Shown: one piece after another, positions 1-6,564 of the stretch
Layout of the letters: each line of letters opens with the position of its first letter
Numbering within the stretch: the stretch's first letter is position 1
Virus record (IMG/VR): IMGVR_UViG_3300031787_007614
Location: 1 to 64,000 of that record
DNA length: 64,000 nucleotides
Reading direction: 5' to 3' (one strand)
Notes under the pieces: model-generated
What the model was told of the DNA's origin: nothing
Databases searched by the model: none
What the model saw: only the letters and a program-made list of their open reading frames with translations
Program-made: the position numbers and the translations under genes

Positions 1-3
1 TTC

Positions 4-153
4 TATAGTCAAGCACCGAGAGATGCTCAATTTATGCGTCCTCCGCTAAGAGTGCAATAGCCGATAGCAGTTATATTAGGATCCGTTCCCGGCCGGTTGG
101 ACCCGAATAGCGTAAGCGTCCTTACACGATACCTTTATCGGTGCTTGACTATA
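4..153 (-). ncRNA. Unassigned structured RNA (A) closed by a 16-bp stem
   Basis: TATAGTCAAGCACCGA (4-19) is the perfect inverted repeat of 138-153. Internal hairpins (GTAAG/CTTAC, GGGTCC/GGATCC) and G-U pairs mostly favour the minus strand. No ORF; lies in the tRNA operon. Confidence 0.6.
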
Positions 154-183: not shown

Positions 184-325
184 TCCTCCCACTGCTAACT
201 ACTGCTTCCCAATTTATCGTCCATCGGCACCCGTGGTAGGGCTTGCGATGCTCATCGGCCCTGAGTTCTGGCTCAGGTGATCCTTGGGATAGGACTGCTG
301 GGCCTTGTCCTGCCCAGCATCAGGA
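184..325 (-). ncRNA. Unassigned structured RNA (B) with H-type pseudoknot
   Basis: Minus strand TGCTGGGC/GCCCAGCA stem whose loop AGGAC can pair with the following GTCCT; further hairpins CCTGAG/CTCAGG and CGATG/CATCG; GC-rich. Confidence 0.55.
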
Positions 326-331
326 AAATTA

Positions 332-530
332 GTTGCTCTGCATCCCCCGGCGGTAATTGTAGTGCATCATCTCTTGGGTTGCCCCGCAATTCTCACACAC
401 CTTCCACCCGCTTCCCGACAGGGACCGCTATCGTGTTGCTAACGGCCTTTCGGTAAGAAGACTACCACCCTTGAGAGTCACCTCACTTCTTATCCTGCGG
501 GTCACAGTATCCGCTAACCAAGCGGAACGT
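332..530 (-). ncRNA. Unassigned structured RNA (C), about 200 nt
   Basis: Minus-strand stems CCGCT/AGCGG, TAAGAAG/CTTCTTA enclosing TGAG/CTCA, and CGGT/ACCG; GC-rich, within the tRNA operon. Confidence 0.5.
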
Positions 531-535
531 CGGGG

Positions 536-700: not shown

Positions 701-791
701 TGGTGGACAACAATGGGAATCTAACCCACTTCTTCCTCGTATGCTATTACGAAGTTTCATACCAGCCTCAGGTAATTGACACATCATGTCC
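701..791 (-). ncRNA. Non-canonical tRNA-like RNA 2
   Basis: GGACA.../...TGTCC acceptor ending ACCA, T-arm GTGGG-TTAGATT-CCCAT, hairpin CTTCGTA/TACGAGG, no canonical D or anticodon arm. Confidence 0.6.
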
Positions 792-798
792 ATAAACT

Positions 799-873
799 TG
801 GCGGTCCCAGGGGGTAACGATCCCCCTCCTCAGCAGTGACAGTGCTGTGTGCGTCCATGAACACCTTGAGACC
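799..873 (-). tRNA. tRNA-Asp(GTC)
   Basis: Full cloverleaf, anticodon loop CT-GTC-AC, G73 and encoded CCA; atypical T-loop ATCGTTA. Confidence 0.9.
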
Positions 874-879
874 AAATTA

Positions 880-1075
880 GGATAAGCTACTGGGTTCCAC
901 GCCAGCCCTTAATTGAGCAGTTACTCTGTCCATCTCATTTATTCAAAGTCTGTGTGCAGTGAGATTCTGCCTATCAGAGTCTGTAAGGGTAGTCTCCATC
1001 CTTACGCTTACGGTCTTCTGCCACCGGATCTCTATCGCTAATCAAACGCTACTTTAACGAAAGTAGTAACGGGAT
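880..1075 (-). ncRNA. Unassigned multi-hairpin RNA (G), about 195 nt
   Basis: Between tRNA-Glu and tRNA-Asp; stems CTACTTT/AAAGTAG, CGGT/ACCG, GTAAGG/CCTTAC, AGACTCTG/CAGAATCT, CTGG/CCAG; no ORF. Confidence 0.55.
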
Positions 1076-1076
1076 T

Positions 1077-1151
1077 TGGTAGAGCGTAGGGGAATCGAAC
1101 CCCTCTTACAGGCGTGAAAGGCTTGTGTCCTAACCGATAGACGAACGCTCC
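1077..1151 (-). tRNA. tRNA-Glu(TTC)
   Basis: Cloverleaf, anticodon loop CT-TTC-AC, T-loop TTCGATT, CCA end. Confidence 0.93.
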
Positions 1152-1157
1152 ATAGTT

Positions 1158-1392
1158 CACTATATGAAAACACATTAGGGAAGTTCTTGACACGCATCAC
1201 CAACTTGCATCAAGACCTCATTACAGGCCCAGTAGTTCCGCCGCCTTCCTGGAGTTTGGTGTAGCCTTATCCCTCACGCTCGATGGTGTCTCGCGCTACT
1301 CTTAGGCCCTCCTGCTTCATGGGTATCCGGCTCGAATCAGCCTTTGTTCACCCCTAACGGACTAGGTAACCCTAATGTGTTTACATATAGTG
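1158..1392 (-). ncRNA. Unassigned structured RNA (H) closed by a 23-bp stem
   Basis: 1158-1180 and 1370-1392 are inverted repeats with one mismatch; GC-rich interior with TCTTGA/TCAAGA and GTAGC/GCTAC stems. Confidence 0.6.
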
Positions 1393-1486
1393 CCCAGAAC
1401 TTAATCTGGGGCACTATACAAAATTAAATTTTTAACGAACTTCAAAGTAGTTTCGATCAACTGCCTTTGTTTTCTAACTAGTCTCT

Positions 1487-1515
1487 AGTATAGCATCTCC
1501 TGCTTTACTGGTCAA
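1487..1515 (-). promoter_or_regulatory. sigma70 promoter, RNA operon (proximal)
   Basis: TTGACC-17-TATACT with extended TG. Confidence 0.75.
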
Positions 1516-1584
1516 CTTGTTTTGTAAATGCCCCGCCTTGTTGCAGGGTCTTTACAAACTTCGCTGTTTTTCTAACTTGTGTCT

Positions 1585-1613
1585 AGTATAGCACCAATCC
1601 AATTATTGGTCTA
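1585..1613 (-). promoter_or_regulatory. sigma70 promoter, RNA operon (distal)
   Basis: TAGACC-17-TATACT with extended TG; downstream sequence duplicated relative to the proximal promoter. Confidence 0.7.
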
Positions 1614-1669: not shown

Positions 1670-2560
1670 TTAGAACTGTACGACCAACCCGCCTGCTACT
1701 TGTTTGACATCAGTGGCTGCTGAGGTTCCCTCAACTGTACGATACAAAACTTGTGCATAGGTCTTTTTGCTGAAAGCATACTCAGCACCTACGTTGTAAC
1801 TCTTGATGCCATTTTCAATGCGACCATAGCTGGCCTTCACTGTGACTGGTCCACCAAGTTTGTGTGCCACGCCGACCAACTGAGCACGGTTGGTGTTGGC
1901 AGCAACGCCTTTGTTGTCGCTTGCGCTGGCAAACACAGTGGTTGCACCAAATTTAGCACGAGCAGCCAACACGTCACTGGTTTCTGCGCCAGCTTCGTAA
2001 CGAGCATAAGTCAACACAGCAGGTCCAACTGCGGCAATCACGGATGCGGCATAAGGATCAGCGGCAGTGCCAACAGCACCAGTGCTACGATCAAAGTTAG
2101 CAGAGACATTGCCAAAGTTCACAGAAGTGAAAGCGGCATTGCTCAAACGCAAACCACGCAGGTTATGCACGTCGGCAGCTGAGCTACCAATCAATGTGCC
2201 AAATGGATCATTGTCGCTGATGGCCAAGAAGTGAGTGTGAACATTGCGACCAAGATCAACGCTACCCATTTTGTGAGCAATACCCACGGTGCTTTGGCGA
2301 TCGCCAAGTCTAGTGTCAGTACCAGTGTCTGGGCTGTTGGCTTGGATGCCGGTCTCGTATGTGGCACGAGCTGTTAATCCGCCACCTAAGTTTTCAGTAG
2401 CACGAATGCCAAAGTGACTCAAGTCATTGGCCATGCCTTGCACGGTGGAAGCACCAGTTTTGGTGTTGTCAAGGTAAGTGCCAACACGACCATAGATACC
2501 AACTTGTGCGCTTGCAACACCAGCAACTGCCAGGGTCAACGCAATTAGAACTTTCTTCAT
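1670..2560 (-). CDS. Gram-negative general porin (Betaproteobacteria-type)
   Basis: Signal peptide, N-terminal V.IYGRV, S.FGIR..E.LGGGL, Y.FSKKT, C-terminal Phe. Confidence 0.9.
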   Translation of the reverse strand: MKKVLIALTLAVAGVASAQVGIYGRVGTYLDNTKTGASTVQGMANDLSHFGIRATENLGGGLTARATYETGIQANSPDTGTDTRLGDRQSTVGIAHKMGSVDLGRNVHTHFLAISDNDPFGTLIGSSAADVHNLRGLRLSNAAFTSVNFGNVSANFDRSTGAVGTAADPYAASVIAAVGPAVLTYARYEAGAETSDVLAARAKFGATTVFASASDNKGVAANTNRAQLVGVAHKLGGPVTVKASYGRIENGIKSYNVGAEYAFSKKTYAQVLYRTVEGTSAATDVKQVAGGLVVQF

Positions 2561-2608: not shown

Positions 2609-2638
2609 ATTATATAGCACAAACACTGAGAATGTCAA
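2609..2638 (-). promoter_or_regulatory. sigma70 promoter of porin
   Basis: TTGACA with downstream TATAAT-like box. Confidence 0.6.
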
Positions 2639-2640
2639 AG

Positions 2641-2666
2641 AAAATGGCTACTTTCGCAGCCATTTT
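2641..2666 (-). terminator. Terminator after tmRNA
   Basis: AAAATGGCT-GCGAAAGT-AGCCATTTT. Confidence 0.75.
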
Positions 2667-2826
2667 GGTGGTTTCTGTTACGAGGTATTTCCTACCCTAG
2701 ACGACCTTAAGCGGCCATCAAGAATTTTTCATCATTTGCAGATAAAAGTTTTGCTTGATTTACGGTCATCGCCTACCGTGCTGTCCACTCTGTTACTCTT
2801 TGCCCTGTCGAATCTAGGTCAGGCCC
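2666..2826 (-). ncRNA. ssrA: tmRNA, two-piece: piece with 5' acceptor strand and tag ORF ANDEKFLMAA* (2707-2739)
   Basis: Starts GGGCCTGA-CCTAGATTCGAC; tag reading frame ends in AA-stop. Confidence 0.92.
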
Positions 2827-2839
2827 ATCATAAAGAAAC

Positions 2840-2917
2840 TTAATCTACGCTTAATGTTGTTAACAACAAGCATAATATTGGAAAAACAATTAATAAAAAT
2901 TTTGCTAAATTTTCCAT
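2840..2917 (-). CDS. 25-aa hydrophobic micropeptide in tmRNA intervening segment
   Basis: MENLAKFLLIVFPILCLLLTTLSVD*; start is 1 nt after the upstream micro-ORF stop. Confidence 0.45.
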   Translation of the reverse strand: MENLAKFLLIVFPILCLLLTTLSVD

Positions 2918-2918
2918 A

Positions 2919-3029
2919 TTACCATAACTCACAGTTTTTTATTTTCTCTTCGTCCAATGTGGTATCACGTGTAAAATAAAATACACCAAACACTAACCAA
3001 AATAACAAAAATAAAACATAACCTATCAT
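2919..3029 (-). CDS. 36-aa single-TM micropeptide in tmRNA intervening segment
   Basis: MIGYVLFLLFWLVFGVFYFTRDTTLDEEKIKNCELW*; RBS AAGGAAG just upstream. Confidence 0.55.
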   Translation of the reverse strand: MIGYVLFLLFWLVFGVFYFTRDTTLDEEKIKNCELW

Positions 3030-3041
3030 TAAACTTCCTTA

Positions 3042-3108
3042 TGGTGGACCTGGGGGGATTCGCACCCCCGTCCAGAACACTTTTCTCTCGGCTTCATACA
3101 GCAATAAC
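3042..3108 (-). ncRNA. ssrA: tmRNA, two-piece: piece with T-arm and ACCA end (transcribed first)
   Basis: GGAC-GGGGG-TGCGAAT-CCCCC-CAGGTCC-ACCA; pairs with GGGCCTG giving the G3-U70 Ala identity. Confidence 0.92.
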
Positions 3109-3112
3109 TCGC

Positions 3113-3141
3113 AGTATATATTTATTCTTTGGGCTTGTCAA
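3113..3141 (-). promoter_or_regulatory. sigma70 promoter of tmRNA
   Basis: TTGACA-17-TATACT. Confidence 0.8.
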
Positions 3142-4548: not shown

Positions 4549-5313
4549 TCAACGGTCTTTGTCAGTTCTTACCAATTGAATTAAGCGGTATCCAGGATCA
4601 AATTCCCACCATTTTTTGCCAAACTGTGGATCTGCGGCAGCGGCGTGATGATTGTTGTGCCAGCCCTCTCCACCAGTCAAATATCCTACCAGCAGGTTAT
4701 TTGAACTTTGATCACGTGTGTCAAAATTTCTATATCCTGATGGACTGTGAGTGAGAGAGTTGGTCAGTGAACTGGCATGTTGCAACAATAGTGACGGAAC
4801 CAAATAAGCATACACTACTGCATAAGGATCTATCATGTAAACTGCCACCCCGACCAAGATAGTGTACAACCAATGATTGTAGTACATGTGCATGTGAAAT
4901 TTGGATTTCACAATCTCTGGAGCATAACTTAATTTTGGAGTAGCAGGTGTGAGTCTAAATTGCACGGCTAGATAACCGTATACCGCAGGTGAGTGCGGAT
5001 CATCTTTTGTGTCAGAGTGTCTATGATGCGCTCGATGTATTGCTACCCAATACAACATTGGTAAAGTTGTGCCAGGAATAGCAATCAATGTTCCTAGATA
5101 TTCAAACCATTTTGGTGCTTGAAAAGAACGATGGGTGATCAGCCGATGAACTGTTACAGTTCCGACTACCATCTTGATATAGTAGACCAACAGACATATT
5201 GCCCACTGCCATGCTTCACTGTTGAAGATAAAGTAGACCAGGATCACATGTAGACAGGCACTGTATGCAATCATTTCGTTGTGCGAAGGCACAAACCAGT
5301 TTTTCTTTTTCAT
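4549..5313 (-). CDS. Membrane fatty-acid (delta-9-type) desaturase
   Basis: Three His boxes HRLITH, HRAHH, WHNNHH; TM segments; WWEFD. Confidence 0.92.
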   Translation of the reverse strand: MKKKNWFVPSHNEMIAYSACLHVILVYFIFNSEAWQWAICLLVYYIKMVVGTVTVHRLITHRSFQAPKWFEYLGTLIAIPGTTLPMLYWVAIHRAHHRHSDTKDDPHSPAVYGYLAVQFRLTPATPKLSYAPEIVKSKFHMHMYYNHWLYTILVGVAVYMIDPYAVVYAYLVPSLLLQHASSLTNSLTHSPSGYRNFDTRDQSSNNLLVGYLTGGEGWHNNHHAAAADPQFGKKWWEFDPGYRLIQLVRTDKDR

Positions 5314-5480: not shown

Positions 5481-5773
5481 AGCCTGGAATCATAAGTGAA
5501 GGCAGCAAGATATCGCATGCTGGCACGGCTGGGAATGTGCTGATTACAGAACCGTTGGTATGCCGCACGCCAACGCTTTTGGACAGGTGCTGGCGCATGG
5601 CAAGCAAGATAATGCAAGTGGCCAAATCTGCGCCCAATGCTGATGTGATTGGGCTTCCAGCCTGCAGGATACCATTTGTCGCGAGTTTGCCAATTGTAGT
5701 TTACCCAGACACCCATTCGGCGTTCTTGCATGATATACTTTTTAGATATATCTTGTGGTCTAAATCGGTTCAT
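5477..5773 (-). CDS. Hypothetical protein
   Basis: ATGA overlaps with neighbours. Confidence 0.6.
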   Translation of the reverse strand: MNRFRPQDISKKYIMQERRMGVWVNYNWQTRDKWYPAGWKPNHISIGRRFGHLHYLACHAPAPVQKRWRAAYQRFCNQHIPSRASMRYLAAFTYDSRL

Positions 5774-6564
5774 TTTTGCATCATCAGCGCATTGAAGTTT
5801 GCAGGAACAACAATTGTTTGCACACGACCGTTCTTGATACCTTCTGAGATATTCATCATAGCCTGCGCTTGCATGTAAGCAATTGACTGAGCACCTTGAT
5901 TACTCAATGCTTGCATACGTTCTGCTTCCATCTTAGCAGTCTTAACTTCAACTTCTTTTTGTTTCAATTCATTCTTGGCACGAACCAACTCATTTGCACT
6001 CGCAACCACAGAATCTGCAGGTACAATATTCCGAATCAACACTTGACCAACAACCAAACTACCATCAAGTTTTTCATCAGCCAAACTCTTTTGAATTTGT
6101 TCTTTAATTGCTTGTTCCATCACTTGGCGATTATCAGCCATGTCTAGTGCCTCGTACTTTCGGGCTTCTTTGTAGATGGCATTACGAGTGGTTTGAACCA
6201 TATAGTTGTACATCAAGTAGATGTCGCCGTTGTGCCGAGCATGGAATGCTTGACTCTTTTGGCTATACAACTCGGCTACCTGTGCTTGATTGATGTTATA
6301 GATAACCACTGCATCAAAGTCTTTCATTGTTGAGTTATCTTTAGCAACAGGTGTCATGTCCTCCAGTTTGACATTAACGTCCTTGATTGGGAATGTAAGA
6401 ACATCACCCCAAAAGGTTTGATTAAACGAGCCAGGCATTAATTCACCTTGCTGGACTTGTTTATCAAAGCCAACACGTACACCAACTTCACCTGTTTCGA
6501 TACGAGTACAACCTGTTGCCAGCACAGCCGCGGCAAGAACGGAGAGAGTCAAAATACGTTTCAT
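5770..6564 (-). CDS. SPFH/band-7 (prohibitin-like) lipoprotein
   Basis: Lipobox LATGC, IETGEVGV, C-terminal coiled coil. Confidence 0.88.
   Translation of the reverse strand: MKRILTLSVLAAAVLATGCTRIETGEVGVRVGFDKQVQQGELMPGSFNQTFWGDVLTFPIKDVNVKLEDMTPVAKDNSTMKDFDAVVIYNINQAQVAELYSQKSQAFHARHNGDIYLMYNYMVQTTRNAIYKEARKYEALDMADNRQVMEQAIKEQIQKSLADEKLDGSLVVGQVLIRNIVPADSVVASANELVRAKNELKQKEVEVKTAKMEAERMQALSNQGAQSIAYMQAQAMMNISEGIKNGRVQTIVVPANFNALMMQK

What the first reader, a model, noticed from the sequence alone, without database searches (positions are those of the whole stretch)
880..1075. RNA G: 195-nt multi-hairpin RNA punctuated by flanking tRNAs
Seen: starts 1-2 nt after the tRNA-Glu CCA and ends about 6 nt before tRNA-Asp, with at least five stems. 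Inference: released as a discrete RNA by tRNA processing.
Basis: partly seen in the sequence, partly recalled or inferred. Interest (0 to 1): 0.6.

Follow-up and report, generated by a model that had tools for sequence, protein, structure and literature searches.

The report
Conserved phage RNA inside tRNA arrays
The 203-base spacer between two phage tRNA genes is a real, strongly conserved, pseudoknotted non-coding RNA of an uncatalogued family that sits in the tRNA clusters of well over a hundred uncultured, mostly freshwater phages; RNA libraries contain it, and its function is unknown.

Summary
tRNA-Glu (1151..1077) is followed directly by a 203-nt spacer (1076..874) and then tRNA-Asp (873..799). 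The window is the start of a 364-kb jumbo-phage genome with about 31 tRNAs.

Folding the single sequence gives nothing above chance. Comparison does: two 17-mers and one invariant core pattern from the spacer hit 118, 47 and more than 119 IMG/VR phage contigs. All 61 distinct full-length copies that were checked lie inside same-strand tRNA arrays, and most abut a tRNA on both sides.

Covariation supports about 11 helices, two of them pseudoknots: 95% of cells paired against 32-39% in slid controls, and 17 pairs with compensatory changes.

No Rfam 15 family matches. There are no hits in 185,579 bacterial and archaeal genomes, in T4 (rnaC/rnaD) or in the nearest cultured jumbo phages.

Contigs from lake and river RNA libraries lie on it.

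Carriers include phages whose DNA polymerase is only about 30% identical to this one, yet the RNA stays 81-87% identical.

Best reading: a stable trans-acting RNA, cut out of the tRNA transcript by tRNA-processing enzymes. Its partner is unknown. It is a new family of a known kind, alongside T4 RNA C/D, GOLLD and ROOL.

The parts
874..1076 (-). 'RNA G': 203-nt structured non-coding RNA (type A of the family). The conserved core is about 883-1074.
   Evidence: R1 gives 230.5 bits and E = 1.5e-70, the only hit in the 364-kb genome. Homologues. Covariation.
1077..1151 (-). tRNA-Glu(UUC) with encoded CCA, immediately upstream
   Evidence: ARAGORN; Rfam tRNA 53.8 bits
799..873 (-). tRNA-Asp(GUC), immediately downstream. 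Its T-loop is unusual (AUCGUUA).
   Evidence: ARAGORN; Rfam tRNA 36.2 bits
1058..1074 (-). 5' strand of long-range helix P1 (1074-1072, pairs with 931-929), plus pseudoknot PK1 (1071-1069 with 1060-1058)
   Evidence: The PK1 pair at RNA positions 6:19 reads CG 53, GC 5, UG 2, AU 1. P1 C:G becomes U:G in 13 sequences.
1049..1066 (-). Hairpin P2 (1066-1063 with 1052-1049). Its loop supplies the 3' strand of PK1.
   Evidence: Two pairs with compensatory changes (UA/CG 53:8 and CG/UA 46:15); 100% of cells paired
1011..1043 (-). Hairpins P3 (1043-1041 with 1029-1027, near-invariant loop UAGCGAUAGAG) and P4 (1026-1023 with 1014-1011, invariant loop GGCAGAAR)
   Evidence: The P3 pair reads UA 54, CG 4, AU 3. 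P4 is invariant in sequence.
983..1005 (-). Variable-length hairpin P5. It is replaced by quite different hairpins in relatives.
   Evidence: Hairpin swap in L013. The closing pair has five pair types: AU 32, GC 12, UG 9, CG 4, UA 4.
932..978 (-). Hairpin P6 (978-975 with 952-949, and 970-967 with 959-956). Its loop (965-960) pairs with 937-932, forming pseudoknot PK2.
   Evidence: PK2 has 5 of 6 pairs with changes on both sides. At least 10 different complementary loop/3'-strand pairs occur across types A and B; a 6-of-6 match occurs in 35 of 93 sequences against 21 of 930 controls.
883..931 (-). 3' module. It holds the P1 3' strand, the near-invariant GGACAG-N-GUAAC-NN-CUC, and helices P8 (911-908 with 886-883) and P9 (905-902 with 893-890) around an invariant GG/UAG internal loop.
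   Evidence: P8 has 3 pairs and P9 has 2 pairs with compensatory changes. The module is shared with the divergent type B copies. Unbiased variants.
1487..1613 (-). Two tandem sigma-70-like promoter matches, both with an extended -10 TG: TTGACC-17-TATACT at 1515..1487 and TAGACC-17-TATACT at 1613..1585. They lie upstream of the RNA/tRNA cluster.
   Evidence: Consensus scan. The count is not above chance (3 found, 2.0 expected), so these are only candidates.

Best explanation
RNA G is a gene for a stable, compactly folded non-coding RNA. It belongs to a large phage-specific family that is not in Rfam.

It is transcribed on the minus strand as part of the phage's tRNA operon. It is then freed by the machinery that matures the neighbouring tRNAs. 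RNase P cutting at the 5' end of the downstream tRNA makes its 3' end. The endo- and exonucleases that trim the upstream tRNA to its encoded CCA make its 5' end.

The released RNA is about 195-200 nt. It folds into a long-range helix enclosing an H-type pseudoknot, three hairpins with near-invariant loops, a variable hairpin and a second hairpin-loop pseudoknot, followed by a conserved 3' stem-loop module.

It most likely acts in trans during infection by binding a conserved macromolecule, probably in host translation, tRNA metabolism or tRNA-directed defence.

Shown: the family, its structure, its context in tRNA arrays, and its presence in RNA libraries.
Inferred: the processing route.
Conjecture: the trans-acting role and the kind of partner.
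For: - Family size: 118, 47 and more than 119 IMG/VR contigs contain exact 17-29-nt cores. There are 93 full-length nhmmer hits, 61 of them distinct, plus 46 further distinct variants.
- Structure: 95.2% of cells paired against 32-39% in slid controls, 17 doubly changed pairs, and 0 of 500 shuffles reaching the score. PK2 complementarity is kept with at least 10 different sequences across two subfamilies.
- About half of the positions are invariant, many of them in loops.
- Context: every copy lies in a same-strand tRNA array, and the flanking tRNAs differ between contigs.
- Copy number: one copy in this genome and 1-2 per complete carrier genome.
- Conservation beyond phylogeny: complete 160-190-kb phages with DNA polymerase only 30-33% identical to ours carry copies scoring 222-232 bits and 81-87% identical.
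- Not coding: the longest ORFs change frame and strand between copies, and element lengths run from 190 to 219 nt, not in steps of three.
- Expression: contigs from RNA libraries lie on it. In X19 a 170-nt contig covers 918-1049. In X17 several contigs run between adapter junctions at 907 and 1066. Their word depth is far above that of contigs on the adjacent porin gene.
- Precedent: T4 rnaC and rnaD lie 1-6 nt from tRNA-Arg and from each other and are called small stable RNAs of unknown role (PMC3014915).
Against: - No RNA ends were mapped. The RNA-run data are assembled contigs, so neither strand nor termini can be read. DNA carry-over and pile-up from many related phages on a conserved segment could inflate depth (caveats printed).
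- The single-sequence fold is no better than shuffles.
- No partner, target or phenotype is known.
- The high nucleotide conservation could partly reflect horizontal exchange of tRNA-array modules rather than constraint alone.
- In about a third of copies the upstream tRNA found by ARAGORN is 50-290 nt away, so a tRNA directly upstream is not obligatory.
Confidence: 0.65

Rival explanations
1. Self-cleaving ribozyme that trims the 3' trailer of the upstream tRNA, working like the HDV-like theta ribozymes found next to phage tRNAs.
For: The conserved core begins 0-4 nt after the CCA of the upstream tRNA in 38 of 61 copies. It has pseudoknots and many invariant unpaired nucleotides. Theta ribozymes set a precedent for ribozymes abutting phage tRNA 3' ends (PMC10879173).
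Against: No ribozyme family in Rfam 15 matches, even at E <= 10 on the 211-nt stretch alone. The 5' pseudoknot leaves only 2 nt where an HDV-like fold needs its P3/L3 (strands at RNA positions 6-8/17-19 and 11-14/25-28; reasoning). The distance to the tRNA end varies, and a third of copies have no abutting upstream tRNA. At about 200 nt it is far larger than known small self-cleavers.
Confidence: 0.08
2. Purely cis-acting element of the precursor. In this reading it is a folding insulator or processing scaffold that helps RNase P, RNase E or other enzymes cut the array, and it is then degraded.
For: It is always embedded in tRNA arrays and usually sits just before tRNA-Asp (40 of 61).
Against: Most tRNAs in the same array are separated by only 4-6 nt and need no such element. 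Near-invariant loops and a conserved double-pseudoknot architecture are far more than a spacer needs. RNA-library contigs cover the element itself, while the bins over the flanking tRNAs are shallow. The flanking tRNAs differ between contigs.
Confidence: 0.12
3. Selfish mobile element, or a horizontally shuffled DNA module, whose conservation reflects recent transfer rather than RNA function.
For: Copies 81-87% identical occur in phages whose DNA polymerases share only about 30% identity. Its neighbours vary.
Against: There are one or two copies per genome, always on the same strand as the tRNAs. Compensatory substitutions preserve the helices, which is selection at the RNA level. No terminal repeats or associated endonuclease gene were noted, though this was not searched for systematically.
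Confidence: 0.05
4. Not a real feature: chance hairpins in a spacer, a small protein gene, or an undetected odd tRNA.
For: The single-sequence MFE z-score is +0.25. Other spacers of about 200 nt in the same array do hold small ORFs, for example the Pro/Gly and Leu/Phe spacers.
Against: More than 100 distinct conserved homologues show covariation. There is no conserved ORF. Neither ARAGORN nor the Rfam tRNA model hits 874-1076.
Confidence: 0.01

Closest known systems
Bacteriophage T4 small stable RNAs, species 1 (rnaC, 139 nt) and species 2 (rnaD, 119 nt)
   Same: They are non-tRNA RNAs encoded inside a phage tRNA cluster on the tRNA strand. They are separated from the preceding tRNA and from each other by 1-6 nt. 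They are stable, and their role is still unknown (PMC3014915). The carrier phages here also have T4-type family-B DNA polymerases.
   Different: No detectable homology. The best R1 score anywhere in the T4 tRNA region is 4.4 bits, E = 0.33, with filters off, and there is no hit in the whole T4 genome. RNA G is longer and has two covariation-supported pseudoknots.
GOLLD and ROOL large ornate RNAs
   Same: They are phage- and prophage-encoded, often lie near tRNA islands, are highly structured with pseudoknots, can be very abundant, and have unknown function (PMC12286853). GOLLD was also first seen in lake metagenomes.
   Different: They are roughly 600-800 nt or more, against about 200 nt here. 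The Rfam GOLLD and ROOL models give no hit, even at E <= 10. Whether RNA G forms homo-oligomers was not tested.
Theta (minimal HDV-like) ribozymes adjacent to phage tRNAs
   Same: They are structured RNAs that abut the 3' end of phage tRNAs and are proposed to take part in tRNA 3' maturation (PMC10879173).
   Different: They are minimal HDV-like self-cleavers, much smaller than RNA G, and were found in gut phages. RNA G matches no HDV model, and its pseudoknot topology does not fit.

Membership tests
Any Rfam 15 family (4227 models) | Match to a curated covariance model | tested here: not met
   Nothing at gathering threshold. At E <= 10 over 1-1700, nothing lies on 874-1076 except the tRNA flanks. 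On 870-1080 alone there are only two noise hits, both on the other strand, with E of 5-7.
T4 rnaC / rnaD | Sequence and structure homology to the T4 species 1 or 2 RNAs | tested here: not met
   R1 with filters off on T4 69.5-74 kb gives a best score of 4.4 bits, E = 0.33. The whole T4 genome gives no hit at E <= 1.
T4 rnaC / rnaD | Non-tRNA RNA gene inside the phage tRNA cluster, on the same strand, a few nt from a tRNA | tested here: met
GOLLD / ROOL | Large (roughly 600-800 nt or more) multi-domain RNA matching the Rfam GOLLD or ROOL model | tested here: not met
   The element is 190-219 nt and bounded by tRNAs. There are no partial hits.
GOLLD / ROOL | Homo-oligomeric RNA-only assembly | not testable with these tools
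   Needs SEC-MALS, native gels or cryo-EM.
HDV-like / theta ribozyme | Nested double pseudoknot (P1, P1.1, P2, P3/L3, P4) with the cleavage site at the 5' end of P1 | tested here: not met
   The covariation-supported strands at RNA positions 6-8/17-19 and 11-14/25-28 leave 2 nt where P3/L3 should be. No HDV-family hit.
HDV-like / theta ribozyme | Self-scission in vitro | not testable with these tools
   Bench assay needed.
tRNA / tRNA-like | Cloverleaf detectable by ARAGORN or the Rfam tRNA model | tested here: not met
   No call within 874-1076.
Bacterial RNase P RNA | P4 long-range helix formed by conserved regions CR-I and CR-V; match to the RNase P models | tested here: not met
   No RNase P model hit. 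The AGAUCCGG stretch, which resembles CR-I by eye, instead forms local helices P3 and P4 according to covariation.
T-box-like tRNA sensor | A UGGN loop whose N covaries with the discriminator base of the cognate tRNA, and a specifier codon matching that tRNA | tested here: not met
   The GGCAG and UGGAA loops stay the same whether the neighbouring tRNA is Asp, Tyr, Ala, Met or Cys. No T-box hit.

The most novel reading that the evidence does not exclude
RNA G is a new functional RNA class that acts directly on tRNAs or on the enzymes that attack them. It could be a decoy or shield that binds tRNA ends or elbows through its invariant GG-containing loops, or that sequesters a host tRNA-cleaving defence nuclease. 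Alternatively it could be a new ribozyme involved in maturing the phage's own tRNA array. This would explain three things: its strict residence in tRNA arrays, its near-invariance across very different phages, and the coexistence of two paralogous types in some arrays.
Probability: 0.15. Interest if true: 0.85.

Novelty: new member of a known kind. Interest (0 to 1): 0.62.

Why it matters
Phage tRNA clusters are usually read simply as sets of tRNA genes. Here the 'spacers' in such clusters include at least one widespread RNA of about 200 nt, and probably several. This one is highly conserved and doubly pseudoknotted, RNA libraries from lakes and rivers contain it, and it is absent from Rfam and from cultured phages.

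It joins T4 RNA C/D, GOLLD and ROOL as orphan phage RNAs tied to tRNA islands. It has practical advantages over them: it is small enough for easy biochemistry and structure work, and there are more than 100 natural variants for covariation analysis.

Its conservation across phages whose polymerases have diverged to about 30% identity suggests that it meets a conserved host component. Given current interest in tRNA-targeting antiphage defences, it is a concrete candidate to test.

Tried and rejected
- Single-sequence folding gave no signal on either strand.
- blastn of 600-1450 against 50,697 GenBank phages matched only the tRNAs.
- The other spacers of about 200 nt in this genome were compared with RNA G and share no similarity. 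Two of them are small ORFs.
- Porin-based relatives L006 and L007 carry the porin at another genome position and lack the tRNA region, so they were of no use.
- L008 keeps the Glu-spacer-Asp order, but its 270-nt spacer is unrelated and contains a tRNA-like 3' half.
- A helix between 67-72 and 130-133, suggested by L013, was rejected because it shows no covariation.
- P7 (151-154 with 159-162) is only weakly supported once unbiased variants are included.
- HDV-like, RNase P-like and T-box-like readings were rejected (see the membership rows).
- A second copy in the same genome was looked for and not found.
- The nearest cultured relatives (Phosso, Atu_ph07, Vibrio phage 2.275.O, CBB) and T4 gave no R1 hit. 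The best was E = 0.19.
- Obligate partnership with the second conserved RNA (324-535) was rejected. That RNA was found in only 1 of 5 distant carriers.
- The IMG/VR candidate-RNA catalogue (PMC10690425) could not be checked because no supplement is held. Parts of RNA G may be among its 29-151-nt candidates.
- Four literature searches found no description of this RNA.
- The type B set was fished with an exact 17-mer. Conservation of that 17-mer among type B copies is therefore a selection artefact and was not counted as evidence.

Full report
**Where it is.** The window is the first 64 kb of a 364,404-bp IMG/VR virus record with 127-bp direct terminal repeats, judged complete. It carries a T4-type family-B DNA polymerase. 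The nearest cultured relatives are jumbo myoviruses: Sinorhizobium phage Phosso at 51% polymerase identity, Agrobacterium phage Atu_ph07 at 47%, and the Rak2/CBB group at 42%. About 31 tRNA genes and a permuted tmRNA, all on the minus strand, form one cluster that wraps around the record's ends.

The finding lies in this cluster. tRNA-Glu(UUC) is at 1151..1077 with an encoded CCA, the spacer is 1076..874 (203 nt), and tRNA-Asp(GUC) is at 873..799. Two sigma-70-like promoter matches with extended -10 boxes lie upstream on that strand at 1515..1487 and 1613..1585, just after the terminator of a porin gene. Their number is not above chance, so they are only candidates.

**Is the structure more than chance?** Not from this sequence alone. 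The MFE of the minus strand is -45.5 kcal/mol, against -46.6 +/- 4.5 for dinucleotide shuffles (z = +0.25). The plus strand gives z = -0.52. Rfam 15 has no match at gathering thresholds, at E <= 10 over 1-1700, or on 870-1080 alone.

**Relatives.** A contig found through the tRNA-Glu 3' end (L013, about 92% identical over the region) showed one hairpin replaced by a different hairpin and a second helix kept through two compensatory changes. Exact 17-mers from the conserved parts then hit 118 and 47 IMG/VR contigs. The same pattern hit none of 185,579 bacterial and archaeal genomes.

nhmmer found 93 full-length copies in the fetched loci, 61 of them distinct. The later scan added 46 more distinct variants. 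The distinct copies are 190-219 nt long and have a median pairwise identity of 82%.

**Structure.** RNA positions count from 1 at window 1076. Mutual information and pair counting on alignment A1 support these elements:
- P1: 3-5 with 146-148.
- PK1: 6-8 with 17-19.
- P2: 11-14 with 25-28. PK1 and P2 together form an H-type pseudoknot.
- P3: 34-36 with 48-50, with the near-invariant loop UAGCGAUAGAG.
- P4: 51-54 with 63-66, with the invariant loop GGCAGAAR.
- P5: a variable hairpin spanning 72-94.
- P6: 99-102 with 125-128, and 107-110 with 118-121.
- PK2: the P6 loop (112-117) with 140-145.
- P7: 151-154 with 159-162, a weak helix.
- P8: 166-169 with 191-194.
- P9: 172-175 with 184-187. P8 and P9 flank an invariant GG/UAG internal loop.

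Overall, 95.2% of cells are paired, against 32-39% when the 3' partners are slid by 1-3 columns. Seventeen pairs change on both sides, against 3-6 in the slid controls. The covariation score is 0.199 against 0.02-0.05, and no shuffle out of 500 reaches it. About 100 of the 203 positions are invariant across the 61 sequences, and many of these lie in loops and junctions.

**A divergent subfamily.** A covariance model (R1) found only this one copy in the 364-kb genome. In other fetched loci it found about 40 much more divergent full-length copies at 36-66 bits, called 'type B' here. In five contigs a type B copy sits a few hundred to a few thousand nt from a type A copy in the same locus.

Type B keeps the 5' pseudoknot, a P3-like hairpin with a CGAUAGA loop, the hairpin-loop pseudoknot and the 3' module, but uses different helix sequences. 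PK2 complementarity is maintained with at least ten different sequence pairs. A perfect 6-of-6 match occurs in 35 of 93 sequences, against 21 of 930 mismatched controls. One caveat applies: type B copies were fished with the exact 17-mer, so conservation of that 17-mer among them is not evidence.

**Context.** All 61 distinct type A copies lie in tRNA arrays on the same strand as the tRNAs; no opposite-strand tRNA occurs within 1.2 kb. In 38 of 61 an ARAGORN tRNA ends 0-4 nt before the element: Tyr in 22, otherwise Glu, Ile, Ala, Ser, Leu, Cys or Met. In 51 of 61 a tRNA starts within about 2 nt of the end of the 203-nt frame: Asp in 40, otherwise Tyr, Ala or Met. So the 'punctuation' by tRNAs is general and does not depend on which tRNAs flank the element. 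Most other tRNAs in this array are only 4-6 nt apart, so a long spacer is not needed for processing.

**Who carries it?** Among ten large carrier records, three are jumbo phages with polymerases 56-63% identical to ours. Seven are complete or near-complete 160-190-kb phages whose polymerases are only 30-35% identical. Five of those seven carry a type A copy scoring 222-232 bits; one carries types A and B, and one carries type B only. The sampled type A copies from four of them are 81-87% identical to ours.

T4 (including rnaC and rnaD) and the four closest cultured jumbo phages have no hit. The RNA therefore looks restricted to uncultured phages. By the labels of the runs that hold this phage, these are mainly freshwater.

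**Expression.** Only assembled contigs of public runs were available, so ends, strand and level cannot be read, and DNA carry-over cannot be excluded. Within those limits, contigs from RNA libraries do lie on the element. In the river run X19 a 170-nt contig covers 918-1049. In the lake run X17 several contigs cover the element, with Illumina adapter directly abutting at 907 and 1066; X19 has one at 918.

The summed word depth in X17 is 3,835 and 16,566 in the two bins over RNA G. It is 7-12 in the bins over the flanking tRNAs and 20-80 over the porin gene. Pile-up from many related phages on a conserved segment contributes to this. The contrast is still what a stable, abundant RNA would give.

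**Not a protein gene.** The longest ORFs are 20-60 codons and change frame and strand between copies. Length differences are not multiples of three, and substitutions are compensatory in helices.

**How it most likely works.** The anatomy and context point to a stand-alone RNA gene in the tRNA operon. RNase P cleavage at the downstream tRNA would define its 3' end. 3' maturation of the upstream, CCA-encoding tRNA would define its 5' end. This is the T4 rnaC/rnaD situation (PMC3014915).

Three features argue for a trans-acting RNA that binds a conserved partner rather than a passive spacer: the dense tertiary-looking architecture, the invariant loops, and conservation across phages that share little else. 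The kind of partner is conjecture. Translation or tRNA metabolism, or a tRNA-directed defence, is suggested only by the genomic company the RNA keeps.

Other readings were tested and not supported:
- A self-cleaving ribozyme like the theta ribozymes (PMC10879173). No ribozyme family matches and the topology does not fit.
- An RNase P-like RNA. The CR-I-like stretch forms local helices instead.
- A T-box-like tRNA sensor. The loops do not covary with the neighbouring tRNAs.

**Novelty.** Four full-text literature searches found no description. I file it as a new family within a known kind: orphan structured RNAs of phage tRNA islands, alongside T4 RNA C/D and GOLLD/ROOL (PMC12286853).

Noticed in passing
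window 324-535 (minus strand): A second conserved RNA-like element of about 212 nt lies downstream in the same array. nhmmer finds it in 38 other fetched loci. RNA-library contigs lie on it, with X17 depth of 1,200-2,800 in bins 281-560. There is no Rfam hit, and its MFE z-score is -1.7. Only 1 of 5 distant RNA G carriers has it by BLAST.
   Followed up: partly
window 1152-1400 (minus strand): A 249-nt leader lies between the candidate promoters and tRNA-Glu, closed by a long inverted repeat (about 1152-1181 with 1369-1398). It is conserved in 7 other loci. An X19 RNA-run contig lies at 1232-1382.
   Followed up: partly
window 55-138 (minus strand) and 1-160: Another conserved segment has hits in 18 other loci. 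Window 1-20 and 140-160 form a long inverted repeat around it.
   Followed up: no
G000 360936-361146 (outside the window, same array): A 211-nt spacer between tRNA-Arg(ACG) and tRNA-Thr(UGU) has a closing stem and is conserved in 28 other fetched loci. The array therefore holds several distinct conserved families of about 200 nt.
   Followed up: partly
window ~602-693 and ~705-780 (minus strand): Two degenerate tRNA-like genes lie just after tRNA-Asp and are missed by default ARAGORN. One has an 8-bp acceptor stem, a long variable arm and no encoded CCA; it scores 20 bits on the Rfam tRNA model, below threshold. Each is preceded by AGUUUAU.
   Followed up: partly
window 1670-2560 (minus strand): The phage carries a Gram-negative porin gene (Pfam Porin_4, E = 3e-25). 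In relatives with 87-88% identical porin protein (L006, L007) the gene sits in a different genomic neighbourhood, matching our 152-163 kb region.
   Followed up: partly
window 2616-3134 (minus strand): A permuted (two-piece) tmRNA gene with tag peptide ANDEKFLMAA lies inside the tRNA cluster. RNA-run contigs lie on it.
   Followed up: no
window 4549-5313 and 5770-6564 (minus strand): Genes with fatty-acid desaturase and SPFH/Band 7 domains lie next to the tRNA cluster.
   Followed up: no
L056, L060, L024, L021, L133: These contigs carry both a type A copy and a divergent type B copy of the RNA G family in one locus. This suggests two paralogous specificities.
   Followed up: partly
window 799-873: The phage tRNA-Asp has a non-canonical T-loop, AUCGUUA, where U54/A58 would normally be. 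It scores only 36 bits on the tRNA model.
   Followed up: no
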